64,000 nt of DNA, from IMG/VR virus record IMGVR_UViG_3300017991_000001, positions 62,001 through 126,000 of that record. The stretch is one strand, 5' to 3'. The position numbers and the translations under genes are program-made. Positions 25,969 to 63,774 of the stretch are shown here, piece by piece (positions within the stretch are counted from its first letter, which is position 1; the number at the start of each line of letters is the position of its first letter). A model generated the notes under the pieces. It was not told where the DNA came from. It was given only the letters and a program-made list of their open reading frames with translations, and searched no databases.

Positions 25969-26673
25969 ATGCAGGTTGATCTCGACGCAGCCGAAGACTT
26001 CAAACACCCAGACCGACTCCAGGCGTTCGTCAAGGGCATCCGCAGGACCGCGCTCTCCTTCAAGGCGTTCAAGGCCAAGATCGAGCCGCTGCTGTTCGAG
26101 GACGAGGATCTCATGTCCGATCACGAGTCGGACCTCCTCCCCGAGTACTACTACTGCAAGTACCTGATCGCCCACGTGCTGCATCCAAAGAAGATCGTGG
26201 AGATCGGCATCCGTGCGGGGCTCTCGGCCTGGACGTTCACGCTGGCCAGCGGGGCGATACAGTACACGGGCTACGATACCTACGCGGAGACGGCCGAGTG
26301 CCGTCCGCTGGCGGAGCGGCGCCTGTTGGCCTACAAGCGTTTCGACATCATCGTGGCCGACTCGCAGCGGCTGGTTAAGGTGCCCAAGGCCGACCTCTAC
26401 CACGTGGACGGCCTGCACACGCGTGCCGGCACCTATGGCGACCTGTGCCTGTGCTACGACCACGCGCCGGACGGGGCGGCGATCCTGGTGGACGATGTGA
26501 TGTGCGGCCCCCACGTGATCGCCGGCGTGTACGACTTCGTACGGGACCGGGGGTGTTACCCGATCTTCTTCAAGGATCTGAGGGGGGAGGCGCTCTTCTT
26601 CAAGCACGCGCCCCACCCCTCCAGGATGTTCATGCTGCAGAGCACGTTTCCGCAGCAGTACATAGGAGTATAG
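25969..26673 (+). CDS. Class I SAM methyltransferase (Methyltransf_24-like)
   Basis: IVEIGIRAGLS, GYDTY, LYHVDGLH, GAAILVDDV. Confidence 0.85.
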   Translation: MQVDLDAAEDFKHPDRLQAFVKGIRRTALSFKAFKAKIEPLLFEDEDLMSDHESDLLPEYYYCKYLIAHVLHPKKIVEIGIRAGLSAWTFTLASGAIQYTGYDTYAETAECRPLAERRLLAYKRFDIIVADSQRLVKVPKADLYHVDGLHTRAGTYGDLCLCYDHAPDGAAILVDDVMCGPHVIAGVYDFVRDRGCYPIFFKDLRGEALFFKHAPHPSRMFMLQSTFPQQYIGV

Positions 26674-26675
26674 CG

Positions 26676-27554
26676 ATGCTCAAGTTCCATGTGCCCGCAG
26701 GCATCGGCGACATTTCCTGGTGCTACTCGAAGGTGGAGGAACTGTCCAAGCAGCGGCAGGTCGGCTTCATCGTGTGCGGGGACCAGCCGCGGCGCAGCCA
26801 TCCCTACGTGAACATCCTGCCGCGGATCGTCAACCTGGGGTACAGCAAGCTTTCCTACGTGCCGCACATCGAGCCCAACCTGCTGCCGCCGAAGGACACC
26901 AATCTGGCCGAACTGAAGAACGGGACGTACTACCTGGGCCTGAACCCCTGGCTGGAGGCCGGGCATCCGCTGCACGAAGCCTTTCCGATGCAGGCAACGA
27001 ATTATCACTACGAGCTCCACCTCCCGCATCCCGACACGCTGCCGGCGGCGCGCATGCTGCGCAGCCTGCCCCAGAAGAAGATCGGGTTCTACTGCAGCTC
27101 CAACCGACACCGCCCGGACCTGGGCATGTGGACGGTGCAGCAGTGGGTGGCGTTCCTGGAGATGGTCAAGGCTTTCCACGAGAACTCGGTCTTCGTGGCC
27201 ATCGGCGCCCCGTACGACGACAAGACGGCGCAGGTGGCCGACGAGCTGGCCAAGAGGCACAGCGTCTACCGGTACCTCAACCAGCCGCCCTGTCAGAGCT
27301 TCCGCCTCATGGAAACGCTCAGCTACTTCTTTGCCTTTCCAAGCGGGCTGGGGATAATGGCGGACGTCCTGCGGGTTCCCTGCATGATGTGGTACTGGGC
27401 CAACCTGGCCGAGTGGGGGCACATGGGTGGCCTGTTCACCTCGTACGCCGACCCCGAGACATTGGCCAGCGGGCAGCATATCGTGGCGCCTTACGCGTCC
27501 GTGGATGAGTCGTTCAAGTTGTTCGCGGAGAAGGGAGCAAGGCATTTCAGATGA
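26676..27554 (+). CDS. GT9-like (heptosyltransferase-type) glycosyltransferase
   Basis: GIGD motif, Y.L.LP linker, W, FVAIG...D, F..PSGL..MA..L.VP. Confidence 0.65.
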   Translation: MLKFHVPAGIGDISWCYSKVEELSKQRQVGFIVCGDQPRRSHPYVNILPRIVNLGYSKLSYVPHIEPNLLPPKDTNLAELKNGTYYLGLNPWLEAGHPLHEAFPMQATNYHYELHLPHPDTLPAARMLRSLPQKKIGFYCSSNRHRPDLGMWTVQQWVAFLEMVKAFHENSVFVAIGAPYDDKTAQVADELAKRHSVYRYLNQPPCQSFRLMETLSYFFAFPSGLGIMADVLRVPCMMWYWANLAEWGHMGGLFTSYADPETLASGQHIVAPYASVDESFKLFAEKGARHFR

Positions 27555-28369
27555 AGACGCTGGTTGCCGGTCCTTGGGTGGGGGAGTTCGGCTGGGAGTT
27601 GATCTCCTGGCAGGCCTGGGTGCGCATACGCTCGCAGGGGTACAAGCAGGTTGTGGTCAGCGCGCCGGCAGGACACGAGGCCCTCTACGATACGGCTACC
27701 GTGTTCGTGCCCCACACCATGTCCGGCAAGAAGGATTGCTGGCGTCTGCTGACCCCGAACCCTTCCGAGCAGGCACGCGTCGAACAGGAACTCTCCAAGT
27801 ACAGGGGCGACCGCATGCGTCCCGGCGGCTACGTCAAGCCCGAGCACCAGCAGTTCGTGAAGCTGGGCGACAAGAAGCGCGTGAACGCCGAGGACCGCTA
27901 TGACGTGCTGATCCACATTCGCGGCCCGGTGGGCAAGCGCTCCTACCACGCCTGGAACCCGCATGACGCAGCCGCCGTGGTCAAGGGCCTGGCCGGCATG
28001 CGCGTCGGCTGCATCGGCACCGAGGCGCCCGCCGTGGACGGGGCCGACGACCTCCGCAACCTGCCGCTCAACCGACTCTGTGATCTCATCGCCGCGGCAC
28101 AACTGGTGATCTCGCCGGCCAGCGGGCCGGCTCTTCTTTCTGGACTGTGCGGCACGCCGTACCTGTGCTGGACCGATGGCGGCTACCGCAGTGCCGTCAG
28201 GGAGAACGACGACAAACGCACGCGCGGGTCCTGGAACCCGCTGGGCACCCCCTGCAAGGTGCTGATCAGGAAGGACTGGAAGCCCGACCCCAACCTGCTG
28301 GTCAAGCACGCGGAGGAGATGCTGATACGTAAGAGGAGAGAAAGTGATGCCGCAATGCCCCGTCTGTGA
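27551..28369 (+). CDS. GT9-like glycosyltransferase
   Basis: GEFGWE, DLRNLPL..LCDLIAAAQLVISPASGP..L..LCGTP. Confidence 0.7.
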   Translation: MKTLVAGPWVGEFGWELISWQAWVRIRSQGYKQVVVSAPAGHEALYDTATVFVPHTMSGKKDCWRLLTPNPSEQARVEQELSKYRGDRMRPGGYVKPEHQQFVKLGDKKRVNAEDRYDVLIHIRGPVGKRSYHAWNPHDAAAVVKGLAGMRVGCIGTEAPAVDGADDLRNLPLNRLCDLIAAAQLVISPASGPALLSGLCGTPYLCWTDGGYRSAVRENDDKRTRGSWNPLGTPCKVLIRKDWKPDPNLLVKHAEEMLIRKRRESDAAMPRL

Positions 28370-28991
28370 CGACACCGCCGGCGACTGCGGGAGCGAGCTG
28401 TTCCGCTGCCCCGCATGCGACCACATCTTCCAGTACCCCGCCGAGGTGGAGTGCATCTACGACAAGGAGTACGTGGCCACCCGCTACGACGTCTACGAGA
28501 CGACGCCGCTGATGAACCACCTGCGGCTGGGTTTCGTGAAGGGCTTCGTGAGTGGGGGCAGGCTCCTGGACGTGGGCTACGGTAACGGGTCTTTCCTGAA
28601 GCTGGCAGGCAAGAACGGCTTCGACATCTACGGCAAGGACGTGCACGGGGCCGACTACGGCATCCGTGAGGTGGAGCTGTCCGACTTCGCGTGGGAGCTG
28701 GTGACGTTCTTCGACTCGCTCGAGCACTTCCCCGATCTCACCCCGGCGCGCGAGATGCGTGCCAGGTACGTGATCGTGTCCATACCCTACAGACCCGATA
28801 CGTTCCCGGCCGACCTGGGCTGGAAGCACTACCGACCCGGGGAACACCTCCACTACTTCACGGTGGAGTCGCTGGCGGCCTTCTTTAGCCACATGGAGCT
28901 GATCAGGATATCGACGCTGGAGGACGCTGTGAGAGGCATGCGGGAAGGTTTGCCCAACATCGTCACCTGCGTCTTCAAACTAAAAGAATGA
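28347..28991 (+). CDS. SAM methyltransferase (Methyltransf_23-like) with N-terminal Zn ribbon
   Basis: CPVC...CPAC; LLDVGYGNGSF; FFDSLEH; EHLHYF. Confidence 0.85.
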   Translation: MPQCPVCDDTAGDCGSELFRCPACDHIFQYPAEVECIYDKEYVATRYDVYETTPLMNHLRLGFVKGFVSGGRLLDVGYGNGSFLKLAGKNGFDIYGKDVHGADYGIREVELSDFAWELVTFFDSLEHFPDLTPAREMRARYVIVSIPYRPDTFPADLGWKHYRPGEHLHYFTVESLAAFFSHMELIRISTLEDAVRGMREGLPNIVTCVFKLKE

Positions 28992-29881
28992 GGCTACACA
29001 TCCTTGGGCCGCGCCAAGACCGGCCCGCGTATTTCGACATGGCTTGCCGTTGCAAGCCGCACAAGGCCCGCTGGTACGGGGGCGGGTTCCGCATGGGCGA
29101 CCGGGCCGCGGCCTACGTCTACCTGTCGGAGTGGCGCCACCACAATCCCAACCGCAAGCTGATCGTGCTGGACAACGTCGGCTTGCCGGGCACGTTTCCC
29201 GAGATGAGCGCGGACTGGCTTTTTGCCGGCATCGCGGACGAGGCGTACGTCGCTTGCGGGCCGTCCAGCCCGATACCCGTTCCGCGCGGTGAGCGGCTCT
29301 ACACGCAGTCGCTGTGGCTGACGTGGCGGCAGCTAAGGATGAGGCATGACAAGCTGCCCAAGCCCGCGATCAGGCCCGACAGGGAGGCATTGCAGACTAC
29401 GTCCCGCTGGTCCGAAACGATCAATCTGCCCCCGTTCTACGTGACGTTGCAGCCGCTTTACGACGCCAAGTACGAGGGTTTCCGCAATCAGTCGATCGAG
29501 TGGTGGCAGGAGGTGTGCACGTCTCTCAACCGGCGTGGTATACCCGTGCTGGTGCTGGACTGCTTCACTTCGGCTTTTCCCATACCTGAAGGCTGCTACC
29601 CGCAACTGAAGTGGCCGGCCAAGACAACGATCATGTACAGCATGGCGCTCGTCTCCAACGCCTGCGTCCACGTGGGCGGACAGACGGGCCTGACGTTGTG
29701 GTCGGCGATCTTCGGCGTGCCCACCGTGGCCGCCTACAAGCACTGGGGCATCATGGACCACAGGGACGCCCGACCCATACCGTTTGGCGCTCCCGTCGAG
29801 CCTGCCGATCTGCGTGGACCGCCTGATGCGGTGGCTCAGAAAGTAGAGAAACTGTTCTATACCAAAGCGGTCCGGGCGTAG
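28988..29881 (+). CDS. GT9-like glycosyltransferase
   Basis: GDR, WWQEV, ALVSNACVHVGGQTGL..SAIFGVPTV. Confidence 0.65.
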   Translation: MRLHILGPRQDRPAYFDMACRCKPHKARWYGGGFRMGDRAAAYVYLSEWRHHNPNRKLIVLDNVGLPGTFPEMSADWLFAGIADEAYVACGPSSPIPVPRGERLYTQSLWLTWRQLRMRHDKLPKPAIRPDREALQTTSRWSETINLPPFYVTLQPLYDAKYEGFRNQSIEWWQEVCTSLNRRGIPVLVLDCFTSAFPIPEGCYPQLKWPAKTTIMYSMALVSNACVHVGGQTGLTLWSAIFGVPTVAAYKHWGIMDHRDARPIPFGAPVEPADLRGPPDAVAQKVEKLFYTKAVRA

Positions 29882-29882
29882 G

Positions 29883-29907: not shown

Positions 29908-30957
29908 ATGCTGGTCAAGATGTATCCGCAGGAGAAGGGCCTGACGTTTGGCCTGAACAAGTACCCGGGCGCCGAGCTGCGCGGCTGCGTCAACGATTCA
30001 GAGGACATGGCCAACGAGCAGGTCAGGGCCTACGACTGGGACCCCGGCAATATCCGGCTCTTGACCGACTTCCGCTGCACGCGTAAGGAGATGTTCAAGC
30101 GGCTGGAGTGGCTGGTGGACGTGAAGAAGGGTGATCGTGTCTTCTTCCACCAGAGCGGGCATGGCGTGCAGTTTCCCTCCCGCTCCTACAGCGGCGAGCC
30201 CGATGGCCTGCTCGAGGCGTTCTGCCCGATCGACTTCGCGTGGTGTCTGGACGGGATGGTGACCGACAAGGACTACGTGGAGTTCTTCAGCCGCATCCCC
30301 AGAGGGGTTGAGTTCACCTGGGTGAACGACTCCTGCCACTCGGGCGACCTGACCCGGGCGCAGCCCGGCAACCCGCACGGCCCAACGATCGTCCCGCGGT
30401 CCTATCCCGTCCCCGAGGACATCGCCTGGCGGCACAAGGGCCTGAAGACCCGCAACATCAAGAGCATGGAGCGGGCCATGGTCTGCGGGAAGATGGACGT
30501 GGGTTTCGTGAGTGCCTCACGCTCCGATCAAACAGCAGCCGACACCTTTGTCAACGGACGCCCCTGCGGGGCGCTCACGCATTACTTCCTCCAGACATTG
30601 CGAGGAAATCGCCAGCTCCCGCTCGAAACGGTGGTGAGCATGACGAGGGACACGTTGCGGGCGCAGGGTTATACCCAGGAGCCGCAGGCCGAAGGCCGGC
30701 GCGTGGACAAGCCGTTCATGATAAACAGGGCGGTTCCCGGTGCGCCCGGTGCTGTAGGTTGCATCAGCCAAACAGGGCCAACCGGTCCGGTCGAGGAGCA
30801 GGTGGGCGTTACCCACGCTTCCACCCCCGAGTCTCACTTAGATCCGGTCGGACCGGGCGGTGTGACCGGCGTTATGGGTCCGGCTGGGACCTACTTGCTG
30901 CCTTTCGACAAGGAAGGCGCGCAGAACGTCTGTCCGCACTGCGGGAAGACAAAATGA
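29908..30957 (+). CDS. Metacaspase / caspase-like peptidase C14
   Basis: GLNKY..AELRGCVND, FFHQSGHG, CPIDF, DSCHSG (His-Cys dyad intact). Confidence 0.9.
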   Translation: MLVKMYPQEKGLTFGLNKYPGAELRGCVNDSEDMANEQVRAYDWDPGNIRLLTDFRCTRKEMFKRLEWLVDVKKGDRVFFHQSGHGVQFPSRSYSGEPDGLLEAFCPIDFAWCLDGMVTDKDYVEFFSRIPRGVEFTWVNDSCHSGDLTRAQPGNPHGPTIVPRSYPVPEDIAWRHKGLKTRNIKSMERAMVCGKMDVGFVSASRSDQTAADTFVNGRPCGALTHYFLQTLRGNRQLPLETVVSMTRDTLRAQGYTQEPQAEGRRVDKPFMINRAVPGAPGAVGCISQTGPTGPVEEQVGVTHASTPESHLDPVGPGGVTGVMGPAGTYLLPFDKEGAQNVCPHCGKTK

Positions 30958-31076: not shown

Positions 31077-32003
31077 ATGGCTTGGATCATCAGTGCTGTC
31101 CTCTTCCTGTGTTGGGGCGCCTACATCGGCCGCCACGACGGGAGCGCCGACTCGGGCGGCCTCAAGCATCTCCTCTATCGCATCTGGCGTCGCCTGGCCT
31201 TCTGGGCCGGCGACGTCAGGTTCTGGTGGGAGTGGTACTTCGGGTTCATCCCGCTACCGCGGTTCTCTTGGGCGCACCATGAGTACGCCATCACCTACGA
31301 GACCCTGCTTGATGCCTGTAAGCGCTTGCAGCCAGGCGACATCATGCTGGCCACCAAGAAGGGCTACATCTTCTCCAACTCGGCAATCCCGGGGTGTTTC
31401 AAGCACGCCGGCATCATCGTGCAAGGCCCCGACTCCGCGAGGGTGCAACCGGTAGACCCCCCTGACAGGCCGTTTTCGACCCCCGACCTCGCGAGGGTGC
31501 AACTCGTTGAGGCGATCTCCGAGGGCGTGGTCAGGCGCCACCCCCTGTGGGCCCGGGGCGACCTGATGATCTTCCTCAGGCCCAAGCACGCGCAGGACAA
31601 GGACCGGGAGAAGGCCGTTGAGATCGCCCACGCCATCGTCGGCTGCAAGTACGACGCCTCCTTCAAGTTCAACATGGAGGAGGAGCTGAAGCTGCTGGCC
31701 GAGCAGGAGGAGAGCCCGCTGGTCGAGAACGTGGAGGAGCTGCACCGTTCCATGCGGAACCTCCGCTCCGAGTACGATATGTCCTTCAGCTGCACGGAGG
31801 TTGTGGCGACGGCCTGGTGGCATATGCGCAAGCGGTTGGGGATCGCCCGCAAGAAGGTCAGGGGCAGGTTGTGCATCACGGCCGACCAATTTTTAAACAG
31901 GGACTTCAAGGTCGTGTGGACAAATGTTACAGTGGGGCAGGCTGAGAAGGCCGGCCTTGGTGAAGAGGGGGTTCGGGAGCTGAAAGCGTACTGGAACGAA
32001 TAA
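31077..32003 (+). CDS. Permuted papain-like amidase (YiiX/YaeF, NlpC/P60 superfamily)
   Basis: LQPGDIML, FKHAGII, LVEA...GV, KYD, FSCTEVV; hydrophobic N-terminus. Confidence 0.8.
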   Translation: MAWIISAVLFLCWGAYIGRHDGSADSGGLKHLLYRIWRRLAFWAGDVRFWWEWYFGFIPLPRFSWAHHEYAITYETLLDACKRLQPGDIMLATKKGYIFSNSAIPGCFKHAGIIVQGPDSARVQPVDPPDRPFSTPDLARVQLVEAISEGVVRRHPLWARGDLMIFLRPKHAQDKDREKAVEIAHAIVGCKYDASFKFNMEEELKLLAEQEESPLVENVEELHRSMRNLRSEYDMSFSCTEVVATAWWHMRKRLGIARKKVRGRLCITADQFLNRDFKVVWTNVTVGQAEKAGLGEEGVRELKAYWNE

Positions 32004-32449
32004 TGGGCTTCAGAAACATCCACCCAGTCAAGATTGAGAAGAAGTGGGGCCACGAGCTTTGCGTGGTCACCAAGCACCCCGTGGACGGACCGGCCGGCTA
32101 CTCGGGTAAGATCCTCACACTCGACTACGGCTGGCAGTGCTCGATCCACTATCACGTGCACAAGACGGAGACGTTCTTCGTGCTGGAGGGGAAGCTGGTC
32201 CTTGAGCTTTACGACCTGAAGGCGTCCTTCGTCAAGACGGCGCCCCCCAGGAACCCCTCCATGGACGATGTCCGGTTGGCGATCTCGACGGTGCTGGAAC
32301 CGGGACAAGGCATGACGCTGGACCCGCTGACGCCGCACCGCTTCTGGACCGTGACGCTGGACGGATGCAAGTTCGTGGAGTTTTCCACGCCCGACGACCC
32401 GTCGGACAGTTACCGCATCACGACATCGGGACCGAAAGATGCAAAGTAA
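32003..32449 (+). CDS. Cupin (sugar isomerase-like) protein
   Basis: KKWGHE, YSGKIL, SIHYHVHKTETF, PHRF, EFSTP..SDSYR. Confidence 0.85.
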   Translation: MGFRNIHPVKIEKKWGHELCVVTKHPVDGPAGYSGKILTLDYGWQCSIHYHVHKTETFFVLEGKLVLELYDLKASFVKTAPPRNPSMDDVRLAISTVLEPGQGMTLDPLTPHRFWTVTLDGCKFVEFSTPDDPSDSYRITTSGPKDAK

Positions 32450-39415: not shown

Positions 39416-39750
39416 CGTACCTCTACCACTTGACCTGGGACATCCGCGTGCCGTCGATCTTGAAGAAGGGACTTATCCCCAACTACCGCCCCAACAAATG
39501 GTCGATGCCAAGGGCGCTCAAGCGTAGCAAGGGGCGGACGTTCCTATGTAAGCACAGTCGCAGGGGGTACTGGTCGTCGGTGTTCGGGGGCGGCTGGGCG
39601 GGGCGTGTCAAGAACGCCACGCTGGTCTGGTTGAAGGTTAACGTCAAGGGCCTGAGGTTAAGGAAGGACAAGGGGACCCTGGAAGGCGATTTCTCGATTA
39701 CAAAGGTGATTCCACCAGAGAGGATCAAACTGGATGCGAGGAGGTCCTAA
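39412..39750 (+). CDS. Possible ADP-ribosyltransferase-fold (Tpt1/KptA-like) protein
   Basis: YLYHLT...SILKKGL.P...TFL...WLKVNVKGL. Confidence 0.4.
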   Translation: MTYLYHLTWDIRVPSILKKGLIPNYRPNKWSMPRALKRSKGRTFLCKHSRRGYWSSVFGGGWAGRVKNATLVWLKVNVKGLRLRKDKGTLEGDFSITKVIPPERIKLDARRS

Positions 39751-40984: not shown

Positions 40985-41292
40985 AAATCTGTGAATTCGT
41001 CGCAGAGCTGATGAGTAACAAGGACGTCCTGCTGAACGGCCACAACGTGCTGGACGAGTCGGTTACCCATACGTGCAACCTGGACGAGAAGGTGTTTGCC
41101 AAGCTCCACCCGGATCAGCAGTGGATGCTGCTCTGCGAGCTTCGGAAGCTCCTGTCCAAGTGCGACCATGCCTACGACGCGGGCCGCGTGGCGCGGGGCG
41201 AGTTGACGGAAGGCGATGTCAACCGCCTCCGCAGCGGCATGGGCGGCGTTGAGGGGAGCGACTTGAGGACGCTTAGGGGACTCGGCGGATGA
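40981..41292 (+). CDS. Hypothetical protein
   Basis: ATGA overlap. Confidence 0.5.
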   Translation: MKICEFVAELMSNKDVLLNGHNVLDESVTHTCNLDEKVFAKLHPDQQWMLLCELRKLLSKCDHAYDAGRVARGELTEGDVNRLRSGMGGVEGSDLRTLRGLGG

Positions 41293-42035
41293 AATCCGAA
41301 GAAATCAGGATCTACGCGTTGCTGTACGGTCCCCACGAGGACCTGCACCGGCGCTTGCTGGACAGCATCGCCAGGAATGTCCCTGAGGACGTGGGGCTCG
41401 ACCTGTGGCTGAACGTCGTGGGCGACGCCACCAAGTACATGGTCAGCGAGTTGGGCGGCGGCCCGCGCAGCGTGCACGTCAACACGAGCGATACAAACGT
41501 GCCGAAGTACGAGGCCATGCGCGAGATGTTCGGGCGGTTGAAGGCGGGCGCGCACCCGGAGGTCAAGTGGCTCGTCTGGTTCGACGACGACGCTCACATC
41601 GAGGGAGAGTACGGTCACTGGTGGATTCACACGACAGGGTGGATCAAGGAGCGCGAGCCCAAGAACGTCTGCTACACGGGCCAGTGCTGGTTCATTGACT
41701 GGAAGGCGGGGCAGGAGCAGTTCATCCGGGAGGCACCCTGGTACAAGGGGCTGCCGGCCAAGATGGTGGGCAACAAGCGCAAGCGGCCGGGCATCGAGTT
41801 CGCGCAGGGGTCGTACTGGTGGCTGAGGCGCGACGTCATGCAGCAGTTGGATTGGCCGGACCCGCGGCTCAAGCACAACGGCGGCGACACCATGCTCGGC
41901 GAAGCGGTTCGCCAACAGGGGTTGCCGTTCCACAAGCTGCCGTGGGACTGTTTCGGCGTGAAGACCAACGACGCACCCCGGCGCGGGCACCACGAGGCGC
42001 CGGCCGGGTGCATCGACAAGAATGCGAGGGCCTGA
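41289..42035 (+). CDS. GT-A fold (GT2-like) glycosyltransferase
   Basis: WLVWFDDDAHI (DxD), FAQGSYWWLRRD, GGDTMLG. Confidence 0.65.
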   Translation: MKSEEIRIYALLYGPHEDLHRRLLDSIARNVPEDVGLDLWLNVVGDATKYMVSELGGGPRSVHVNTSDTNVPKYEAMREMFGRLKAGAHPEVKWLVWFDDDAHIEGEYGHWWIHTTGWIKEREPKNVCYTGQCWFIDWKAGQEQFIREAPWYKGLPAKMVGNKRKRPGIEFAQGSYWWLRRDVMQQLDWPDPRLKHNGGDTMLGEAVRQQGLPFHKLPWDCFGVKTNDAPRRGHHEAPAGCIDKNARA

Positions 42036-51766: not shown

Positions 51767-51992
51767 GCTGAAGATTATTTCGGACGGCACACCCGAAGGT
51801 ACGCGCCTGGTCGACAGTGTGACGTCGGAGGATTTGAAGTTGCCCATTAAGAGCATTGTGTGGCGGTTTGACGTGGAGAGTTTCCCAACCGCGGAAGTGA
51901 CGCTGTTGTGTCCTCTGGCTACGTTGGTGGCGGATACCGTCATAGGAGGCCCGGATGGACCGGTCGAAAACAAAGGTGGCAGTGATCGGTGA
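51759..51992 (+). CDS. Small hypothetical protein
   Basis: LKIISDGT..GTRLVD. Confidence 0.55.
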   Translation: MRRLKIISDGTPEGTRLVDSVTSEDLKLPIKSIVWRFDVESFPTAEVTLLCPLATLVADTVIGGPDGPVENKGGSDR

Positions 51993-52938
51993 CGTGATGC
52001 TGGACGTGCACATCCACTGTGACGTGACGGGCATCTCCCCCGAAGACGACATCGCCCCCAAGCTGCGCATCCGCGAGGAGACCTTGCGGCCCGGCGGAGC
52101 CGGCAACGTGGCCCTCAACCTGAAGAGCCTGGGCCTGATCGACGAGGTCTACCTCTTCGGGTTGGTCGGTGCCGACGAGGAGGGCGACATGCTCAAGGGC
52201 GCCGTTGACGGCGCCTGCATCAATTTCATGGAGCTCGTCGACACCCGGCCCACCACCGTCAAGACCCGCTACCTGACCCAGCGCGGGCGGCACCTGTGCC
52301 GGGTGGACCGCGAGTCCGTTTTTCCCGTGACGGGCCACGAGCGCAACGCGTTGGAGAAGGCCATCATGAGCCACGGCCCGTACGACATGTTCGTGATCTC
52401 AGACTACGGCAAGGGCGTGGTCACGGACGGACTGATGGAGGGGTTGCGGGAGCGCAGCGGGGAGTCCCTGCCCATCGTGGTCGACCCCAAGGGGGACGAC
52501 TTCACCAAGTACGGCGAGGTGTACGCGGTCACCCCCAATATCAAGGAGTTCCTGGGCATCATGCGGAACCGCGCCGCGGACGTCTGGAACCTGAAGTGCG
52601 CGGCCCAGAACATCGTCATCACCCGCGGCGAGGAGGGCTGCCAGCTTCTGCGCACGGACGACAGGCAGCTCTTTCAGGGCGCATACACGGGTGACCCCGT
52701 CAAGAACACCTTCCCCTCCCGGGCCCGCGAGGTGGGTGACCCCACCGGCTGCGGGGACTCCTTCGTGGCGGGGCTGGTCAGCTCGCTGGTGGTGCATACG
52801 CAGCATCCCAAGCACGAGAGGCTGCAGCAGGCCTGCCGCTTCGCCAACGCGGTGGGGGCCTGCGCCTACGACCACCAGGGGGCCCGGTCGGTCACGCTGG
52901 ATGAGGTGCAGAAAGAGTTCGAGACGTTCAACTACTAG
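51955..52938 (+). CDS. Heptose-7-phosphate kinase (HldE/RfaE domain I, PfkB family)
   Basis: VIGDVMLD, RISP-like GISPE, PGGAGNVALN, TTVKTR, RVDRE, SDYGKG, VDPKG, TPN.KE, TRGEEG, DPTGCGDSFVA. Confidence 0.9.
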   Translation: MDRSKTKVAVIGDVMLDVHIHCDVTGISPEDDIAPKLRIREETLRPGGAGNVALNLKSLGLIDEVYLFGLVGADEEGDMLKGAVDGACINFMELVDTRPTTVKTRYLTQRGRHLCRVDRESVFPVTGHERNALEKAIMSHGPYDMFVISDYGKGVVTDGLMEGLRERSGESLPIVVDPKGDDFTKYGEVYAVTPNIKEFLGIMRNRAADVWNLKCAAQNIVITRGEEGCQLLRTDDRQLFQGAYTGDPVKNTFPSRAREVGDPTGCGDSFVAGLVSSLVVHTQHPKHERLQQACRFANAVGACAYDHQGARSVTLDEVQKEFETFNY

Positions 52939-57075: not shown

Positions 57076-58938
57076 GTGCCGATCGACAACACAGCCGTCT
57101 TCTCGTCCTTTCCCAATGAGCCGTCCGGCTCCAACCAGGCCAACCGCTCCAACCGCTTCAGCGGGGCGTTCCCGGACCCCTACCTGGACTATGCCTCCAC
57201 GCAGATGCCGCGCAGCATGTACGACGTGCTGCGCTGGTGCGAGTACGTGTGGATCACCTACGGCACGTACCGCATGGCCTGCCAGCGCGTGGTCCGGTAC
57301 TTCCTGACCCGCATCGAGCTGACCGACGCCTCGGACGACGAGAAGGAGAAGTTCGAGGACTTCCTCGGCCCCGAGCACCTCAACCTGATGCACGAGTTGG
57401 CCAGCTCCGGCGATAACCGGATGGCTTACGGCAACGACTTCATCTCCATGCACGTGCCGTTCCGCCGGCACCTGAAGTGCCCCAACTGCAAGGCGGAGAG
57501 CCCGTTGAAGGGCATGGCCTACCGTTGGATCGGGTGGCGCTTCGAGTCCAAGTGCAAGAAGTGTAAGTACGAGGGCCGCTTCGAGCGCGTGGACCGCCGG
57601 TCCATCGAGCAGGACAAGCTCAGGATCATCCACTGGCCGGCCCACGAGATCCGCATCCTGCACCACCCCATCACCAACGAGTCGATGTACTTCTGGGAGA
57701 TCCCGCCCACGGTCAGGAGCTTGATCGAGCGGGGCAACGAGTTCTACCTGGAGAAGACGCCTTGGGAGATCATCGAGGCTTGCCGGCAGCGCAAGCTTTT
57801 CCGCTTCAACAAGGACGTGATGTTCCACTTGCGCGACGAGCCCATCTCGGGTGTGCGGGACTATGGCTGGGGCATTCCCCTCATCATGGGGAACTTCAAG
57901 CAGGCCTGGCTCATACAGGTCCTGAAGCGCTACAACGAGGCCATTGCGCTGGACTACATCATCCCGTTCCGAGCGGTGACGCCCAAGCCGGGCACCTCGC
58001 GTGAAGCCGACCCGTTGCTGCACATGAACCTGGGCAACTTCCAGAACAAGGTCCTGGGCATGTTCAGGCAGCACCGCCGCGACCCGACCATGATCCACGC
58101 GCTGCCGTTCCCGGTGGAGATGCAGATGTTGGGCGCGGAGGGCAAGCAGCTCGCGCCTTCGGAGCTGCTGGACGCGGCCACCGACGAGTTTCTCAATGCA
58201 CAGGGGATACCCGCCGAGCTTTACAAGGGCACGCTGCAACTGCAGGCCATGCCCACGGCGCTGCGCTTGTTCGAGCGCACATGGGTGTCACTCATAGATG
58301 GCTTTAACGCGATGATCAATTGGATATTCAGGCGCGTATCCGATTTAATGAACTGGGAGAACTTGAAGGGAAGACTGCAACCGGTCACCATGGCCGACGA
58401 TCTGGAACGGAAGGCCGTCATGCTGCAGCTGGCCGCCGGTCAACAGATCTCCCGCCAAACGGCCCTGGCGCCCTTCGGCATCGATCTGCGCGAGGAAATC
58501 AAGCGCATGTTCGAGGAAGAGGAATACACCCAGGAGCAGATGGCGCGTTTCCAGGAGGAAATGGCGCAGAAGCAGGAACTCCAGCAGACCATGCAAATGG
58601 GTGCTGCCGGCATGCTGCCGCCAGGTGGCGCGGCCATGCCTCCAGGCGCCGCACCAATGCCAGGGGCGCCGCCTCCGGCCATGGGCGCTCCCGCCGCTCC
58701 CGCCGCCGCCGGCCAGCAGGGCGTCTCCATCGACGACCTGTCCATGCAGGCCGAGCAGGAGGCCCACCGTCTCATCTCCATGCCGTATGAGATGAGGAAG
58801 TCCGAGCTGTTGCAGATCAAGCGATCCAACGAGACGCTGCATGCCCTGATCATCTCCAAAATGGACACACTGAGGAATCAGGCCAAGACGCAGGGGGGTC
58901 AAATGTTGCTTCAACAGTCCGCGGGTGCCGCGGCGTGA
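57076..58938 (+). CDS. Putative portal / head morphogenesis protein with CxxC insertion
   Basis: 620 aa; YGN.F and WGIP elements, acidic Gln/Pro/Ala-rich tail, position at start of structural-like block; no search run. Confidence 0.4.
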   Translation: MPIDNTAVFSSFPNEPSGSNQANRSNRFSGAFPDPYLDYASTQMPRSMYDVLRWCEYVWITYGTYRMACQRVVRYFLTRIELTDASDDEKEKFEDFLGPEHLNLMHELASSGDNRMAYGNDFISMHVPFRRHLKCPNCKAESPLKGMAYRWIGWRFESKCKKCKYEGRFERVDRRSIEQDKLRIIHWPAHEIRILHHPITNESMYFWEIPPTVRSLIERGNEFYLEKTPWEIIEACRQRKLFRFNKDVMFHLRDEPISGVRDYGWGIPLIMGNFKQAWLIQVLKRYNEAIALDYIIPFRAVTPKPGTSREADPLLHMNLGNFQNKVLGMFRQHRRDPTMIHALPFPVEMQMLGAEGKQLAPSELLDAATDEFLNAQGIPAELYKGTLQLQAMPTALRLFERTWVSLIDGFNAMINWIFRRVSDLMNWENLKGRLQPVTMADDLERKAVMLQLAAGQQISRQTALAPFGIDLREEIKRMFEEEEYTQEQMARFQEEMAQKQELQQTMQMGAAGMLPPGGAAMPPGAAPMPGAPPPAMGAPAAPAAAGQQGVSIDDLSMQAEQEAHRLISMPYEMRKSELLQIKRSNETLHALIISKMDTLRNQAKTQGGQMLLQQSAGAAA

Positions 58939-59310: not shown

Positions 59311-59321
59311 GGAGTGGGACC

Positions 59322-59687
59322 ATGCGCATACTGGTTGTCGACTCAAACCGGGTGTTCGCGAGGAAGGTGGGCGACTTCCTGGAACAGCACCTGAAGAAGG
59401 TCGAGGTCGACTATGCCACAAACGTGCCGATCCTGCGACGCAGGTTGAGGGTCAACGACTACGACTACATCATCGCCGACATCTTCACGGCTTTCGACGC
59501 CAAGGCCATGCAGGAGGTGCTGAGCGACGTTGACACGCCGATGCTGGTGTGGTCGATCCTCAAGTCGCCGGACCGCATCACGAACGTCTTCAGGGATCAG
59601 CTCGCCAAACGCGTGCTGCCGAAGCCCGACGACGACGCGGGCATCGAAGCGGCCGTGACGTCTGTCATGCTTCAAACTGTTGAATGA
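59322..59687 (+). CDS. Stand-alone response regulator receiver (CheY-like) domain
   Basis: MRILVVD, YDYIIAD, PMLVWS, LPKP. Confidence 0.7.
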   Translation: MRILVVDSNRVFARKVGDFLEQHLKKVEVDYATNVPILRRRLRVNDYDYIIADIFTAFDAKAMQEVLSDVDTPMLVWSILKSPDRITNVFRDQLAKRVLPKPDDDAGIEAAVTSVMLQTVE

Positions 59688-60298
59688 TGGAAGCGACCTA
59701 CGACCACAACCTGGCCGTCTTCGGCCGCTGGATCGGATTCTGGCGCGACCGTTGGCACAGCAAGGGCGAAGCCTACAGCGGCGGCGTCGAGCAGACCCGC
59801 ACCATCGAAGGCATCATCCGAGGCCTTTTCTCCCCCAAGCACTACTACCCGGACGCCATGGACTTCGGCGCTGGCCACGGCCGCTTCTGCGAGCTGATGA
59901 GCCTGTACTGCGGCCACATCTGGGCGGCGGACATCGTGGACGACATGCTGGACTGCTACGGTTCCAAGGCGCCCACGGTCACGCCCATGAAGCTGGAGTG
60001 GCCGGTCAAGCTGCCCCTGCGGGACGACAAGCTGGACCTGCTGTGGGCCTTCTTCACCTTCCAGCACATCGTCGACCCCACCATCTTCCAGCTCACCACC
60101 CAGGAGCTGCGCCGGGTCCTCAAGTCCGGTTCTCGCATCCTGATCATTGACAACGCCGTCGATACGGCCAATCATGTACGTTCCCGCGGCCCCGAGGCAC
60201 TGGGGAAAGCACTGGGCATGAAGCCCGGCTTCACGCAAGTGCGCGTGACCATAGGGAATCCGCATGACCATTGGCTGATCGACGGGGTCAAGGCTTAA
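59684..60298 (+). CDS. Class I SAM methyltransferase (Methyltransf_11-like)
   Basis: MDFGAGHGR, AADIV, LPL.D..DL, FQHI, LRRVLKSG. Confidence 0.85.
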   Translation: MMEATYDHNLAVFGRWIGFWRDRWHSKGEAYSGGVEQTRTIEGIIRGLFSPKHYYPDAMDFGAGHGRFCELMSLYCGHIWAADIVDDMLDCYGSKAPTVTPMKLEWPVKLPLRDDKLDLLWAFFTFQHIVDPTIFQLTTQELRRVLKSGSRILIIDNAVDTANHVRSRGPEALGKALGMKPGFTQVRVTIGNPHDHWLIDGVKA

Positions 60299-61815: not shown

Positions 61816-61819
61816 AGCC

Positions 61820-62533: not shown

Positions 62534-62581
62534 CCGTAAAGATGCGGGCGCCTATCATGAGGCCGGTACGGAGAAGGGCCC

Positions 62582-62833
62582 ATGGCAAAATCTCAAGGTA
62601 CGTTTGGGAACGGCGCCGACACGCAATTCGACGTCAACGCGGGCTTCAGCACCGCCGTCGTTTGCGTGCGGCTCTTCGACCTTAACCGGGACGGACTTGA
62701 GATCCCGGCTTTCCAGCTGCAAAAGCAGACGCCCACGGCCAACAGTGTAAGGTTCATCTTGACCCCGGCACCGGCGTCAAACTCGATCCAGTACGTGATT
62801 ACGGACGGTACGGAACCGCCAGATCCGGCGTGA
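62582..62833 (+). CDS. Single-domain paralog of the preceding repeat
   Basis: GNGADTQFDVNAGF...TPTANSVRF..TPAPASNSI. Confidence 0.6.
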   Translation: MAKSQGTFGNGADTQFDVNAGFSTAVVCVRLFDLNRDGLEIPAFQLQKQTPTANSVRFILTPAPASNSIQYVITDGTEPPDPA

Positions 62834-62844
62834 GGAGGTAGGTG

Positions 62845-63774
62845 ATGGCTGACACTCCGATGTTCAACCCGATTGACATGCAAAACAATCGGATCAAGAA
62901 CCTGCCCGCTCCCGTCGACGATGACGATCCGTTGCGCAAGGTCGACCAGTCTTCCGGCCCAACCGGGGTTACGGGGGCCACCGGCGCCTCGGGCGCGGCC
63001 GGTACGGACGGCGTGACAGGCGTGACGGGTGCCACCGGCGCGGCCGGTGTTACGGGCGTGACCGGGGTCTCGGGCGCGGCCGGTACGGACGGTGTCACGG
63101 GTGTGACCGGAGCCACAGGCTCCGCAGGGGCTCAGGGTGTGACCGGCGTGACTGGTGCTACAGGTTCCGCCGGGTCAGCGGGAGCGCAAGGCGTGACCGG
63201 CGTGACCGGTGCCACGGGCTCGGCGGGTGCTGCCGGCGCCACGGGTGTGACCGGTGCGCAAGGCGTGACCGGCGTGACCGGTGCGACCGGTCTTGGCGTG
63301 ACCGGCGTGACCGGGGCCACGGGCTCAGCGGGTTCCGTTGGCGCGACAGGCGCCACCGGGGCCACCGGTGCCACAGGACCGGCCATCAACGCCACGGAGT
63401 CCGCAATCGGTTCGGTTGAGCTGGCTACTGAGGCCGAAGCTAAGGCTGGTGCTACAGGCGCTGGTAGTGTGGGTCCGCTGGCCGTACGCCCCATTCATCT
63501 GATGGTATACCGCGACCCGAACTATGGTACGCTTATCGCCCGCGCAAACCTGACACCGCCGGCCTCAACTCCGTATGCCCGAGGCTCCTACGCTGTCGAA
63601 CTTCAGTCTGAGATCAACGCCGACGATCAGGTGGCCTATGGGGCCTATGATGTAGTGGTTGGCAGTCGGAATAAGAGTACCCTCGGCAGTTACGCCAACG
63701 TCGTTCATGGGCGAGCCAATTCCTGCGAGGGCGGTGACAACTTCGTTTTCGGCACGTCAAACAGCATCGGCTAG
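62845..63774 (+). CDS. Collagen-like (Gly-X-Thr) fibre protein
   Basis: [15 protein letters not shown]-terminus, 47 G-X-Y triplets, GxxN-rich C-terminus. Confidence 0.8.
62956..63384 (+). repeat. Collagen triplet repeat region
   Basis: 47 triplets with one G-L interruption; mostly GVT/GAT. Confidence 0.9.

What the first reader, a model, noticed from the sequence alone, without database searches (positions are those of the whole stretch)
25969..63774. Heptose-based glycosylation system with a candidate substrate: Thr-rich collagen fibre
Seen: an operon of MTase-GT9-GT9-MTase-GT9 (25969-29881), a sugar-type cupin (32003), GT2-like (41289) and GT-B-like (45819) genes, a stand-alone HldE kinase (51955), another MTase (59684), a sulfotransferase (20), and a collagen-like fibre with Thr at the Y position in 29 of 47 triplets. 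Known: GT9 enzymes use ADP-heptose; AAH/TibC-type heptosyltransferases modify Ser/Thr of surface proteins; GXT collagen of Bacillus BclA is O-glycosylated. Inferred: the phage may build methylated or sulfated heptose glycans on virion fibres. Alternatives are remodelling host LPS for superinfection exclusion, or modifying DNA.
Basis: partly seen in the sequence, partly recalled or inferred. Interest (0 to 1): 0.7.

Follow-up and report, generated by a model that had tools for sequence, protein, structure and literature searches.

The report
Phage heptose-type glycosylation gene set
An uncultured 211-kb phage from marine sediment carries a conserved set of at least seven sugar-adding enzymes (four shaped like bacterial heptose transferases), plus sugar-methylating, sulfating and heptose-activating enzymes, and it most likely uses them to coat its own particle proteins with sugars, though the target has not been shown.

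Summary
The methyltransferases, cupin, PfkB kinase, sulfotransferase and collagen repeats match curated profiles. The three 'GT9' genes match no GT9 sequence profile. Their predicted folds are nevertheless closest to the solved GT9 heptosyltransferases WaaC, WaaF and TibC (Z 14-18, against 12.6 or less for other GT-B folds). The kinase is HldA-like. An HldC-like nucleotidyltransferase lies elsewhere in the 211-kb genome, and gmhA, gmhB and hldD are absent.

A second cluster (GT1-methyltransferase fusion, Pfam-positive GT9 fusion) lies among tail genes, near three more GXT collagen genes. Almost the whole set is kept in a relative at 40-60% identity.

The acceptor is not shown. Three observations favour virion proteins:
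- In 11 of 31 related viral loci the GT9-like gene follows the major head gene.
- Known routes to a DNA acceptor are absent.
- Poly-serine tracts occur only in the structural quarter of the genome and keep their positions in orthologues.

Collagen is absent from 0 of 7 complete GT-bearing phages, so collagen Thr is not the family-wide acceptor. The window's collagen gene is the N-terminal piece of a split fibre. Verdict: partly supported, a new variant of phage virion glycosylation, untested.

The parts
1..598 (+). Sulfotransferase (Sulfotransfer_2). The gene starts 85 nt upstream of the window and encodes 227 aa.
   Evidence: Pfam PF03567, E 3.6e-7 for the in-window ORF and 6.3e-7 for the full length. 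An orthologue at 51% identity exists in relative G001.
22112..23053 (+). P-loop kinase-like protein (AAA_33). Its role is unknown. A role in sulfate-donor supply is not supported.
   Evidence: Pfam AAA_33, E 6e-14. The APS_kinase match covers the P-loop only, E 0.02. Homologues lie near the GT in L012/L013, and an APS_kinase/AAA_33 gene lies near the GT-sulfotransferase cassette in L044.
24022..25470 (-). Conserved gene transcribed divergently from the operon. It has one predicted membrane helix. The function is unknown; an ATP-grasp-like C-terminus is my reading only.
   Evidence: GC3 0.87. No Pfam hit. 66% identical orthologue at the same position in L045. Sequence read.
25969..26673 (+). 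SAM methyltransferase of the Methyltransf_24 (TylF-like sugar O-methyltransferase) type. First gene of the operon.
   Evidence: Pfam, E 8e-9. Conserved next to GT_A in L045, L015 and L028. A TylF label appears on a relative's homologue.
26676..27554 (+). GT_A, a GT9-like GT-B glycosyltransferase.
   Evidence: AF2 model, pLDDT 96.7. Foldseek top hits are WaaF, WaaC, 3tov and TibC. VIA Z is 18.5-14.3 for GT9 chains and 12.6 or less for the rest. 74 homologues: one carries PF01075 and one is named heptosyltransferase by JGI. Gly9, Gly11 and Asp12 are invariant. The PSGL motif aligns to TibC.
27551..28369 (+). GT_B, a GT9-like glycosyltransferase.
   Evidence: The Atlas model of this exact protein has TM 0.79/0.85 to a viral cluster in which 67% of members carry PF01075. 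Further rows are GT9 fusions. Orthologues in L045 (67% identity) and G001 (46%).
28344..28991 (+). SAM methyltransferase (Methyltransf_23) with an N-terminal Cys4 zinc-ribbon-like motif. It is the conserved partner of the GT_A family.
   Evidence: Pfam, E 4e-11. A homologue is present in 17 of 31 GT_A loci, often adjacent.
28988..29881 (+). GT_C, a GT9-like glycosyltransferase.
   Evidence: AF2 model, pLDDT 90.7. The 26 best Foldseek PDB hits are all GT9: WaaC, WaaF, 3tov and TibC. The Atlas neighbour agrees.
29908..30957 (+). Caspase-like peptidase C14 with a short GXY run at its C-terminus. It is not a fixed part of the operon.
   Evidence: Pfam PF00656, E 2e-19. Absent from the operon in L045. 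Its orthologue lies elsewhere in G001. GXY run read.
31077..32003 (+). Membrane-anchored protein resembling a permuted papain/NlpC-P60 (C92) amidase. Conserved operon member.
   Evidence: Pfam PF05708, E 2e-5, below the cut-off. N-terminal hydrophobic helix. Orthologues sit between GT_C and the cupin in L045 and in G001.
32003..32449 (+). Sugar-type cupin (D-lyxose/D-mannose isomerase family). Last conserved gene of the operon.
   Evidence: PF07385, 30.1 bits, above the 20.8 cut-off. NCBIfam LyManIsom and WbuC matches are weak. PDB 2y0o lyxose isomerase, E 0.06. The position is conserved in L045, L046 and G001.
39734..41292 (+). Two conserved genes of 416 aa and 103 aa that precede the GT2-like gene in all close relatives. 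Function unknown; the L045 and L046 homologues carry an AcrVA2-like Pfam label.
   Evidence: Synteny in L045 and L046. No Pfam hit for the window copy.
41289..42035 (+). GT2-like (GT-A, DDD motif) glycosyltransferase.
   Evidence: 173 homologues at 42-72% identity, many with PF00535/PF13641 or named GT2. Its C-terminus aligns to the C-terminal domain of the GT9 fusion protein, E 6e-4. No direct Pfam hit.
45819..46736 (+). GT-B glycosyltransferase with a GT1/GT4-like fold.
   Evidence: Atlas structure, TM 0.68-0.74 to GT1/GT4 clusters. Feature neighbours include DNA alpha- and beta-glucosyltransferase clusters. Orthologue in G001 at 29% identity.
51955..52938 (+). Stand-alone HldA/HldE-domain-I-like heptose-7-phosphate kinase.
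   Evidence: PfkB, E 3e-30. TIGR02198, E 6e-59 over its full length, below the equivalog cut-off.
57076..58938 (+). Portal protein. It marks the start of a virion-gene stretch.
   Evidence: 27-30% identity to the annotated portal of Salmonella phage Arash and to Vibrio phages, E 1e-64 to 1e-75. In L033 a 39%-identical portal is followed directly by MT23 and GT_A homologues.
59684..60298 (+). SAM methyltransferase (Methyltransf_11), two genes downstream of the portal.
   Evidence: Pfam, E 3.5e-11.
62842..63774 (+). Collagen-like fibre, N-terminal piece. 47 GXY triplets with Thr at Y in 28, then a tail-fibre-like motif and the first beta-helix-like repeats.
   Evidence: Pfam Collagen, E 2e-19. 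Tail-fibre PHROGs down to E 2e-42. Triplet count. Aligns to residues 1-319 of a 932-aa fibre in G001.
63800..64000 (+). Start of the next ORF (383 aa, runs to G000 126951). It carries the rest of the beta-helix repeats and the fibre C-terminal domain, in a different frame from the collagen ORF.
   Evidence: The same sequence, with 0 differences, is seen in contigs of four runs.

Best explanation
The genes form a phage-encoded cytoplasmic glycosylation machinery that builds methylated, possibly sulfated, heptose-containing O-glycans on the phage's own virion proteins before or during assembly.

Proposed steps:
1. The host supplies sedoheptulose-7-P isomerase and the bisphosphate phosphatase (inferred).
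2. The phage HldA-like kinase and HldC-like nucleotidyltransferase raise the supply of NDP-D-glycero-beta-D-manno-heptose. The gene identities are shown; the activities are inferred.
3. Four GT9-like enzymes (GT_A, GT_B and GT_C in the window, plus a Pfam-positive GT9 fusion at G000 196539-198290) transfer heptose. The fold is shown; donor and acceptor are inferred.
4. Two GT-B and one or two GT2-like enzymes add further sugars (inferred).
5. The Methyltransf_23, _24 and _11 enzymes and the sulfotransferase decorate the glycan (inferred).
6. The cupin isomerises or epimerises a sugar (inferred).

Likely acceptors are Ser/Thr-rich parts of structural proteins. These are the positionally conserved poly-Ser tracts of eight proteins encoded at 156.8-208 kb, several of them at the extreme C-terminus, and perhaps the four GXT collagen-like fibres.
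For: Enzyme identities:
- GT9-like folds for GT_A, GT_B and GT_C.
- A true PF01075 domain elsewhere in the genome.
- Kinase and nucleotidyltransferase, the latter with HxGH and GSTT motifs.
- HldE-like genes in 4 of 23 records with the GT_A family, all four from large phages.

Virion link:
- In 11 of 31 GT_A loci the gene closes a head module: TerL, portal, major head protein, small protein, GT2, GT_A.
- L033 has portal, MT23, GT_A in a row.
- The second GT cluster lies between a tail-fibre/decoration-repeat protein and three collagen fibres, downstream of a baseplate wedge gene.

Conservation:
- The gene set is syntenic core in L045 and L046 and is almost wholly kept in G001 at 29-62% identity. 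This fits a phage-intrinsic substrate.

Candidate acceptors:
- All 10 poly-Ser runs lie in 8 proteins of the last genome quarter (hypergeometric p 1.6e-6).
- They are written with mixed Ser codons.
- 6 of the 8 proteins have G001 orthologues with the tract at the same position.
- One poly-Ser-tailed protein is encoded directly downstream of the GT9 fusion gene in both phages.

Other support:
- The GT_A motif PSGL matches the protein heptosyltransferase TibC rather than the DSGL of WaaF. This is weak, E 0.076.
- Precedent: phage-encoded GTs glycosylate the capsid in mycobacteriophages Che8 and Rita (PMC11256854).
Against: - There is no experimental or direct computational evidence for any glycan, donor or acceptor.
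- The window operon itself lies among non-structural genes. In two other phages the GT_A cassette sits beside DNA-metabolism genes.
- Two operon-linked proteins have membrane helices, which fits an envelope target as well.
- The poly-Ser proteins have no recognised family, so their virion role rests on genome position only.
- Poly-Ser can be a plain linker.
- Collagen is absent from most phages with the GT family.
- The GT_A homologues in head modules are only 25-34% identical to the window's GT_A and may differ in acceptor.
- gmhA, gmhB and hldD are missing, so heptose supply depends on an unknown host.
- The complex prediction gave no answer.
Confidence: 0.45

Rival explanations
1. Host envelope remodelling. 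The GT9-like enzymes and heptose-activating enzymes alter or extend the LPS inner core, or another lipid-linked glycan, of the infected Gram-negative host. The purpose would be to block superinfection or to stop progeny sticking to debris.
For: - All solved GT9 enzymes that rank first are LPS heptosyltransferases.
- Cyanomyophages carry a kinase, nucleotidyltransferase and GmhA that are read as LPS or cell-wall genes (PMC12801897).
- A huge-phage survey called a phage heptosyltransferase I an LPS auxiliary metabolic gene (PMC10747093).
- The C92-like protein and the divergent 482-aa protein have membrane helices.
- GT_B and GT_C are basic, with pI 9.3-9.4.
Against: - The set is conserved core synteny across a phage clade rather than a variable, host-specific moron.
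- Seven or more GTs and five methyltransferases are far more than surface conversion usually needs.
- The GT_A family sits inside head modules of small phages.
- No priming transferase, flippase or ligase was noticed among the roughly 80 proteins scanned. The genome was not scanned exhaustively.
Confidence: 0.2
2. DNA hypermodification. The kinase, nucleotidyltransferase and GT-B enzymes place heptose-containing glycans on phage DNA bases to evade restriction.
For: - A phage gene cluster (HAD/APH kinase, cytidylyltransferase, GT-B) puts one or two heptoses on 5hmC (bioRxiv 10.1101/2023.12.21.572611).
- In a 718-kb phage contig the GT_A-GT-MT23 cassette lies beside RNR, a 5-hmdU DNA kinase domain, a C5 DNA methylase and dCMP deaminase.
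- In L044 it lies between a UvrD helicase and SSB.
- Atlas feature neighbours of the 45819 GT-B include DNA alpha- and beta-glucosyltransferase clusters.
Against: - Six-frame profile searches of the complete genome find no thymidylate-synthase/hydroxymethylase family member, no TET/JBP dioxygenase and no C5 DNA methyltransferase. The known ways to make a hydroxymethyl acceptor are therefore missing.
- No GT9-fold enzyme is known to act on DNA.
- The DNA GTs in the preprint resemble T4 beta-GT, not GT9.
Confidence: 0.1
3. Another cytoplasmic target or product. Options are glycosylation of host proteins for takeover (as EarP or the AAH/TibC-type enzymes modify proteins), or synthesis of a free or small-molecule heptoside. 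Alternatively the GT9-like enzymes use a non-heptose donor.
For: - EarP is among the structural matches of GT_A.
- GT9-fold proteins in the Atlas are fused to many other domains.
- NDP-heptose enzymes occur in viruses with unknown roles (PMC11461863).
- None of GT_A, GT_B or GT_C meets the GT9 sequence profile.
Against: No specific evidence points to any such target. The links to head modules and tail clusters, and the conserved poly-Ser tracts, fit a virion target better.
Confidence: 0.15

Closest known systems
LPS heptosyltransferases WaaC and WaaF (CAZy GT9, PF01075)
   Same: GT_A and GT_C have this GT-B fold as their best structural match (Z 16-18). They keep an N-terminal Gly-x-Gly-Asp loop and the C-domain G-x-x-D and SGL-type motifs.
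   Different: There is no PF01075 hit. The proteins are shorter (272-297 aa against about 320-350). The KxWP and DSGL motifs are altered. The three are not similar to each other by sequence. The acceptor is unknown, and the genes lie in a phage.
Autotransporter heptosyltransferases TibC/AAH (protein O-heptosylation of Ser)
   Same: They have the same fold class (Z 14.3). They are the only proteins known to put heptose on Ser residues of proteins from ADP-heptose. GT_A shares the PSGL variant of the C-domain motif.
   Different: The iron-binding Cys cluster and the N-terminal extension needed for the dodecamer were not seen. The model aligns to TibC residues 98-395 only. Sequence similarity is not significant (E 0.076).
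Mycobacteriophage virion glycosylation (Che8, Rita; Freeman et al. 2023, as summarised in PMC11256854)
   Same: Phage-encoded glycosyltransferases, with methyltransferases nearby, modify capsid proteins. This matches the logic proposed here and the arrangement of head module followed by GTs in the small phages.
   Different: Those phages infect actinobacteria and have 2-4 GTs of other families and no heptose pathway. Here there are at least 7 GTs, including GT9-like ones, in a jumbo phage with its own NDP-heptose enzymes. Nothing has been shown experimentally.
Cyanomyophage heptose genes (P-SSM2, P-SSM5, S-CAM1: kinase, nucleotidyltransferase, phosphoheptose isomerase)
   Same: These are phage-encoded HldE-type kinase and nucleotidyltransferase genes, 23-26% identical to the window kinase.
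   Different: The cyanophages also carry GmhA, and this phage does not. Their genes are read as host LPS or cell-wall auxiliary genes.
Phage 5hmC DNA glycan gene clusters (bioRxiv 10.1101/2023.12.21.572611)
   Same: A sugar kinase, a cytidylyltransferase and a GT-B enzyme together give heptose transfer.
   Different: Those clusters depend on a C5-methyltransferase with a TET-type dioxygenase, or on a ThyA-type hydroxymethylase. None of these was found here. Their GTs are T4 beta-GT-like.
Bacillus BclA and giant-virus fibril glycosylation (from my own knowledge, not tested here)
   Same: GXT collagen-like filaments with a C-terminal globular domain, and virus-encoded multi-GT/methyltransferase machineries that decorate surface fibrils.
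   Different: The enzyme families and sugars differ. Collagen is not linked to the GT family beyond this clade.

Membership tests
CAZy GT9 / Pfam PF01075 (Glyco_transf_9) | Significant match to the family sequence profile | tested here: not met
   GT_A, GT_B and GT_C have no PF01075 hit at E<=10, and the six-frame search of the genome finds only the 583-aa ORF at G000 196539-198290. One distant GT_A homologue (P0061) carries PF01075.
CAZy GT9 / Pfam PF01075 (Glyco_transf_9) | GT-B fold closest to solved GT9 enzymes | tested here: met
   GT_A: Z 18.5 (3tov), 17.6 (WaaF), 16.4-16.6 (WaaC), 14.3 (TibC). The best non-GT9 enzyme scores 12.6. GT_C: the top 26 Foldseek hits are all GT9. GT_B: TM 0.79/0.85 to a viral cluster that is 67% PF01075.
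CAZy GT9 / Pfam PF01075 (Glyco_transf_9) | Use of ADP-L/D-glycero-D-manno-heptose as donor | not testable with these tools
   Support is indirect only: HldA-like and HldC-like genes in the same genome and HldE-like genes in large relatives.
HldE domain I / HldA heptose-7-phosphate kinase (TIGR02198) | Full-length match above the equivalog cut-off | tested here: inconclusive
   E 6.3e-59, 199.6 bits over positions 6-313 of 315, which is under the 345-bit cut-off. It is 45 orders of magnitude better than any other sugar kinase family.
Complete ADP-heptose pathway (GmhA, HldA/E-I, GmhB, HldC/E-II, HldD) | All five activities encoded | tested here: not met
   Present: the kinase and the nucleotidyltransferase at G000 17166-17678 (117 bits to TIGR02199; CTP_transf_like). 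Absent: gmhA (TIGR00441, SIS_2), gmhB and hldD. A HAD-like domain inside the RNAP-beta-like giant protein matches a PHROG labelled 'phosphoheptose isomerase', but only LNS2/PNKP phosphatase models in Pfam.
Bacterial autotransporter heptosyltransferases (TibC/AAH) | Sequence homology to TibC/AAH and an autotransporter substrate | tested here: not met
   The profile match to TibC is E 0.076 over 42 residues. No autotransporter was looked for or seen. The resemblance is of fold and one motif only.
Phage-encoded virion glycosylation (mycobacteriophage type) | GT genes linked to virion genes | tested here: met
   11 of 31 GT_A loci lie directly after the major head gene. The second cluster lies among tail and fibre genes. 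For the window operon itself the link is indirect.
Phage-encoded virion glycosylation (mycobacteriophage type) | Glycans demonstrated on virion proteins | not testable with these tools
   The phage is uncultured and known only from sediment and seawater metagenomes.
Phage DNA glycosylation (T4-type or 5mYOX-type) | An enzyme that makes a hydroxymethylpyrimidine acceptor (ThyA-family hydroxymethylase, or C5-methyltransferase plus TET/JBP) | tested here: not met
   PF00303, PF12851 and PF00145 have no match at E<=1 in the complete genome.
Collagen triple-helix repeat proteins (PF01391) | Uninterrupted G-X-Y repeats above the Pfam cut-off | tested here: met
   69.3 bits; runs of 38 and 9 triplets. 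Three paralogues lie at G000 206727-210262.
GT2 (PF00535) | Match to the family profile | tested here: inconclusive
   The window protein 41289-42035 has no hit. Many of its 173 homologues at 42-72% identity do, and a DDD motif is present.

The most novel reading that the evidence does not exclude
A clade of uncultured jumbo phages of Gram-negative sediment bacteria, together with unrelated 45-50 kb phages that carry a GT2 and a GT9-like gene right after the major head gene, heptosylate their own virions. GT9-fold enzymes would have been recruited from LPS synthesis to put methylated or sulfated heptose glycans on conserved poly-Ser tails and collagen-like fibres. This would be the first heptose-based virion glycosylation, and the first outside actinobacteriophages. 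A side possibility is that the operon's lyxose/mannose-isomerase-type cupin stands in for the missing GmhA.
Probability: 0.3. Interest if true: 0.8.

Novelty: new variant of a known kind. Interest (0 to 1): 0.6.

Why it matters
Virion glycosylation by phage-encoded enzymes has so far been shown only for a few actinobacteriophages, where it shields particles from antibodies. If GT9-like enzymes do the same in phages of Gram-negative hosts, three things would follow:
- Heptose would become a building block of virus particles.
- The many orphan 'LPS-like' genes in huge-phage genomes would have an explanation.
- There would be a compact, testable set of enzymes (three small GT9-like proteins with paired methyltransferases) and candidate acceptor tags (short poly-Ser tails) for glyco-engineering and for understanding phage adsorption and stability in sediments.

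It also bears on why viruses carry NDP-heptose enzymes at all, a question left open in PMC11461863.

Tried and rejected
- **Direct sequence searches for the GTs.** Pfam at E<=10, NCBIfam and phmmer against PDB gave nothing for the three GT9-like proteins, the GT2-like gene or the GT-B gene. The profile of the GT_C family against PDB gave nothing.
- **Link between GT_A and GT_C families.** hhalign gave probability 1.4%, so no sequence-level link can be claimed.
- **Isolated phages.** Megablast and tblastn against GenBank phages found no relative of the operon, GT_C or the GT2-like gene.
- **Methyltransferases and cupin against PDB.** The two methyltransferases gave no hit and the cupin gave only marginal ones.
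- **GmhB.** The PHROG label 'phosphoheptose isomerase' on a domain of the 2358-aa RNAP-beta-like protein was checked. Pfam sees only a weak HAD phosphatase (LNS2/PNKP type), so I do not count it as GmhB or GmhA.
- **APS kinase.** The AAA_33 protein matches only through its P-loop, so it is rejected as evidence for PAPS supply.
- **Neighbours of the HldC-like gene.** They are not sugar genes.
- **Promoters.** An 8-mer enrichment over 73 upstream regions and the sigma-70/terminator scan gave nothing above chance. The operon could not be assigned to early or late transcription.
- **GT2 of the small phages.** It has no detectable similarity to the window's GTs.
- **Complex prediction.** The GT9 fusion with the poly-Ser-tailed neighbour returned 'no answer' and is not used.
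- **Amber read-through.** Reading the two TAGs after the collagen ORF with the phage's suppressor tRNA does not join it to the next ORF, because the frames differ.

Full report
**What the window is.** It is bases 62001-126000 of a complete 211,084-bp virus record with direct terminal repeats. The genome has 62% G+C, and nearly all genes are on the + strand. True reading frames are easy to recognise because their third-codon-position G+C is 0.8-0.95.

The portal (window 57076-58938) and two RNA-polymerase-beta-like genes downstream of it are laid out as in Salmonella phage Arash, at 27-30% identity. No isolated phage carries any of the glycosylation genes. The same sequence is present in at least seven sediment and seawater metagenome runs. 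The host is unknown.

**Check of the observation.** Eight of the listed genes match curated profiles directly.
- Methyltransf_24: 25969-26673.
- Methyltransf_23: 28344-28991.
- Cupin of the D-lyxose-isomerase family, above Pfam's cut-off: 32003-32449.
- PfkB kinase: 51955-52938.
- Methyltransf_11: 59684-60298.
- Sulfotransfer_2: the in-window ORF is 20-598, and the gene starts 85 nt before the window.
- Collagen repeats: 62842-63774.

The kinase is by far closest to HldE domain I (TIGR02198, E 6e-59, full length), although it scores below the equivalog cut-off.

The three 'GT9' genes fail the sequence test. They have no PF01075 hit even at E<=10 and no PDB sequence hit, and they show no similarity to each other. 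The real gene is 26676-27554.

At the level of structure the label holds.
- An AlphaFold model of GT_A (pLDDT 96.7, built on 34 homologues) aligns best with every solved GT9 enzyme. Z is 18.5 for Veillonella GT9, 17.6 for WaaF, 16.4-16.6 for WaaC and 14.3 for TibC. The best non-GT9 enzyme reaches 12.6.
- The GT_C model (pLDDT 90.7) has GT9 chains as its 26 best Foldseek hits.
- The Atlas model of GT_B matches a viral cluster in which 67% of members carry PF01075, with TM 0.79/0.85.

The 41289 gene belongs to a large family, conserved at 42-72% identity, many of whose members are Pfam GT2. The 45819 gene has a GT1/GT4-type GT-B fold. Thr is at position Y in 28 of 47 triplets.

**The rest of the genome.**
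- An HldE-domain-II-like nucleotidyltransferase is encoded at G000 17166-17678. It scores 117 bits to TIGR02199, matches CTP_transf_like, and carries HxGH and GSTT motifs.
- gmhA, gmhB and hldD are absent. The phage therefore encodes the two nucleotide-consuming steps and must rely on its host for the others. A commentary on Tang et al. likewise states that the phosphatase is missing from viral heptose gene sets (PMC11461863).
- A second glycosylation cluster lies at 194-198 kb. It holds a GT1-methyltransferase fusion (619 aa) and a 583-aa protein with a true PF01075 domain. The C-terminal domain of that protein is related to the window's GT2-like protein (E 6e-4).
- This second cluster lies downstream of a baseplate-wedge gene. 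It is flanked on one side by a protein made of tail-fibre/head-decoration repeats and on the other by three further GXT collagen-like genes at 206.7-210.3 kb.

**Conservation.** In a close relative (L045) the order is MT24, GT_A, an extra 281-aa gene, GT_B, MT23, GT_C, C92-like, cupin, a 73-aa gene, a 416-aa gene, a 103-aa gene, then GT2-like. The caspase gene and window 32.6-39.7 kb are therefore insertions here. A MAG contig (L046) keeps the same order as far as the RNase-T-like gene.

A 163-kb relative (G001) keeps GT_A, GT_B, MT23, GT_C, C92, the cupin, the GT2-like gene, the GT-B gene, the sulfotransferase, HldC-like, GT1-MT, GT9-X and four collagen genes, at 29-62% identity. It also has an HldE-like ORF. 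This is a conserved core of the clade and not a variable accessory island.

**What is the acceptor?** Five lines of evidence bear on it.
1. *Context of the GT_A family in 31 viral loci.* A Methyltransf_23 homologue accompanies it in 17. In 11 loci, from 43-50 kb phages (some complete), the gene closes the head module: large terminase, portal, three small genes, major head protein, an 82-aa protein, a GT2 (in one case fused to a methyltransferase), then GT_A. In L033 the order is portal, MT23, GT_A.
2. *Collagen.* It is found in only 2 of 23 records with the family and in 0 of 7 complete ones. Collagen Thr therefore cannot be the family's general acceptor.
3. *Routes to a DNA acceptor.* No ThyA-family hydroxymethylase, TET/JBP dioxygenase or C5 DNA methyltransferase is present. 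Heptosylated 5hmC DNA is now known (bioRxiv 10.1101/2023.12.21.572611), and in two other phages the cassette lies beside DNA-metabolism genes. The absence of these routes therefore matters.
4. *A new observation: poly-Ser tracts.* Homopolymer runs of five or more residues in the predicted proteome are almost all serine (S 10, K 2, G 2, A 1).
   - All ten serine runs lie in eight proteins encoded at 156.8-208 kb, which is 49 of 244 proteins (hypergeometric p 1.6e-6).
   - Several sit at the extreme C-terminus. One of these is the 161-aa protein encoded directly after the GT9 fusion gene.
   - The tracts use all six Ser codons.
   - Six of the eight proteins have G001 orthologues (44-67% identity), and each orthologue has a tract at the equivalent position.
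   - Such tracts are classic O-glycosylation targets. Examples, from my own knowledge, are the serine-rich repeat adhesins and the Ser residues heptosylated by AAH and TibC.
5. *A sequence motif.* The C-domain motif of the GT_A family (FPSGL) aligns to TibC (LPSGL) rather than to WaaF (NDSGL). The match is weak, E 0.076.

**Most likely mechanism.** I favour cytoplasmic O-glycosylation of virion proteins with methylated, perhaps sulfated, heptose-containing glycans, at a probability of about 0.45. The gene identities, folds, synteny and tract conservation are shown. The donor, the acceptor and every catalytic step are inferred.

The rivals are as follows.
- Remodelling of the host LPS core (about 0.2). 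It is favoured by what GT9 enzymes are known to do, by the cyanophage precedent and by two membrane-anchored proteins linked to the operon. It is disfavoured by the clade-wide conservation, the number of enzymes and the head-module context.
- DNA glycosylation (about 0.1).
- Other targets or donors (about 0.15).

**The collagen gene.** It is real, and it matches tail-fibre PHROGs (E down to 2e-42). Its C-terminus begins a beta-helix-like repeat that continues in the next ORF, which is in another frame. In G001 the two parts belong to one 932-aa fibre. The split is identical in contigs from four runs of three studies, so it is not a one-off assembly error. Whether it is a two-part fibre, a frameshift site or a defect cannot be told.

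**Comparison with known systems and novelty.** Each component has a precedent.
- GT9 heptosyltransferases.
- TibC/AAH protein heptosylation.
- HldE-type genes in cyanomyophages.
- Capsid glycosylation in mycobacteriophages (PMC11256854).
- Heptose on phage DNA.

The combination has not been described. It consists of four GT9-fold enzymes with paired methyltransferases, a sulfotransferase and NDP-heptose enzymes, conserved across a jumbo-phage clade, with GT9-like genes inside the head modules of other phages. I did not find it in the literature searched. I rate it a new variant of a known kind, with interest 0.6. The evidence is entirely comparative, and the key claim needs the co-expression and mass-spectrometry test.

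Noticed in passing
G000 156782-207986 (outside the window; loci L007-L010): Ten poly-Ser runs (5-13 residues) lie in eight proteins, all in the structural quarter of the genome. Several are at the extreme C-terminus. They use mixed Ser codons and keep their positions in orthologues of a relative at 44-67% identity.
   Followed up: yes
window 62842-64000 and on to G000 126951: The collagen-like fibre is split into a 310-aa ORF and a 383-aa ORF in different frames, with two in-frame TAGs after the first. The relative G001 has a single 932-aa fibre. The split is identical in contigs of four runs.
   Followed up: yes
L003:17106-17180 (G000 about 35106-35180): ARAGORN calls a tRNA with anticodon CTA, an amber suppressor reported as tRNA-Pyl. 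TAG still ends 43 of 218 predicted genes, so the genome does not look recoded.
   Followed up: partly
L006:7428-14504 (G000 131428-138504): A 2358-aa RNA-polymerase-beta-like protein contains an intein with a LAGLIDADG domain, a SET-domain match and a HAD-type phosphatase-like domain. The last matches a PHROG labelled 'phosphoheptose isomerase'.
   Followed up: partly
window 29908-30957: A caspase-like peptidase C14 is inserted in the GT operon. It is absent at this place in L045 and lies elsewhere in G001. Its C-terminus carries a short collagen-like run (GPG GVT GVM GPA GT) resembling the fibre repeats.
   Followed up: partly
window 60271-61815: A 514-aa protein combines a LigD 3'-phosphoesterase domain with weak ATP-dependent DNA/RNA ligase matches. 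It lies between the portal and the fibre genes.
   Followed up: no
L044:10001-13831: A 56-kb phage contig carries, in order, a GT_A homologue, a 242-aa gene, Methyltransf_23, Sulfotransfer_3 and a faint Sulfotransfer_1, with an APS-kinase/AAA_33 gene nearby. Glycosyltransferase, methyltransferase and sulfotransferase therefore travel together in an unrelated phage.
   Followed up: partly
L016-L018, L024-L029, L038 (head modules of 43-50 kb phages): The major head proteins end in ...GSSGA or ...GSQGA, and the following 70-90-aa protein ends in ...VGSQS(A). This shared C-terminal motif lies next to GT2 and GT9-like genes and is a possible modification site.
   Followed up: no
window 39734-40984: A conserved 416-aa protein whose L045 and L046 homologues carry a precomputed AcrVA2-like (PF26125) label. 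The window copy gave no Pfam hit. It always precedes the GT2-like gene.
   Followed up: no
window 47990-49413: An RNase_T-type exonuclease (E 9e-14) and a weak RuvC-like protein lie in the conserved syntenic block between the GT-B gene and the kinase.
   Followed up: no
L032/L041 (G017, a 511-kb phage record): This megaphage has six PF01075-type matches and an HldE-like gene that runs across the record's ends. Multiple GT9-like genes seem common in very large phages.
   Followed up: no
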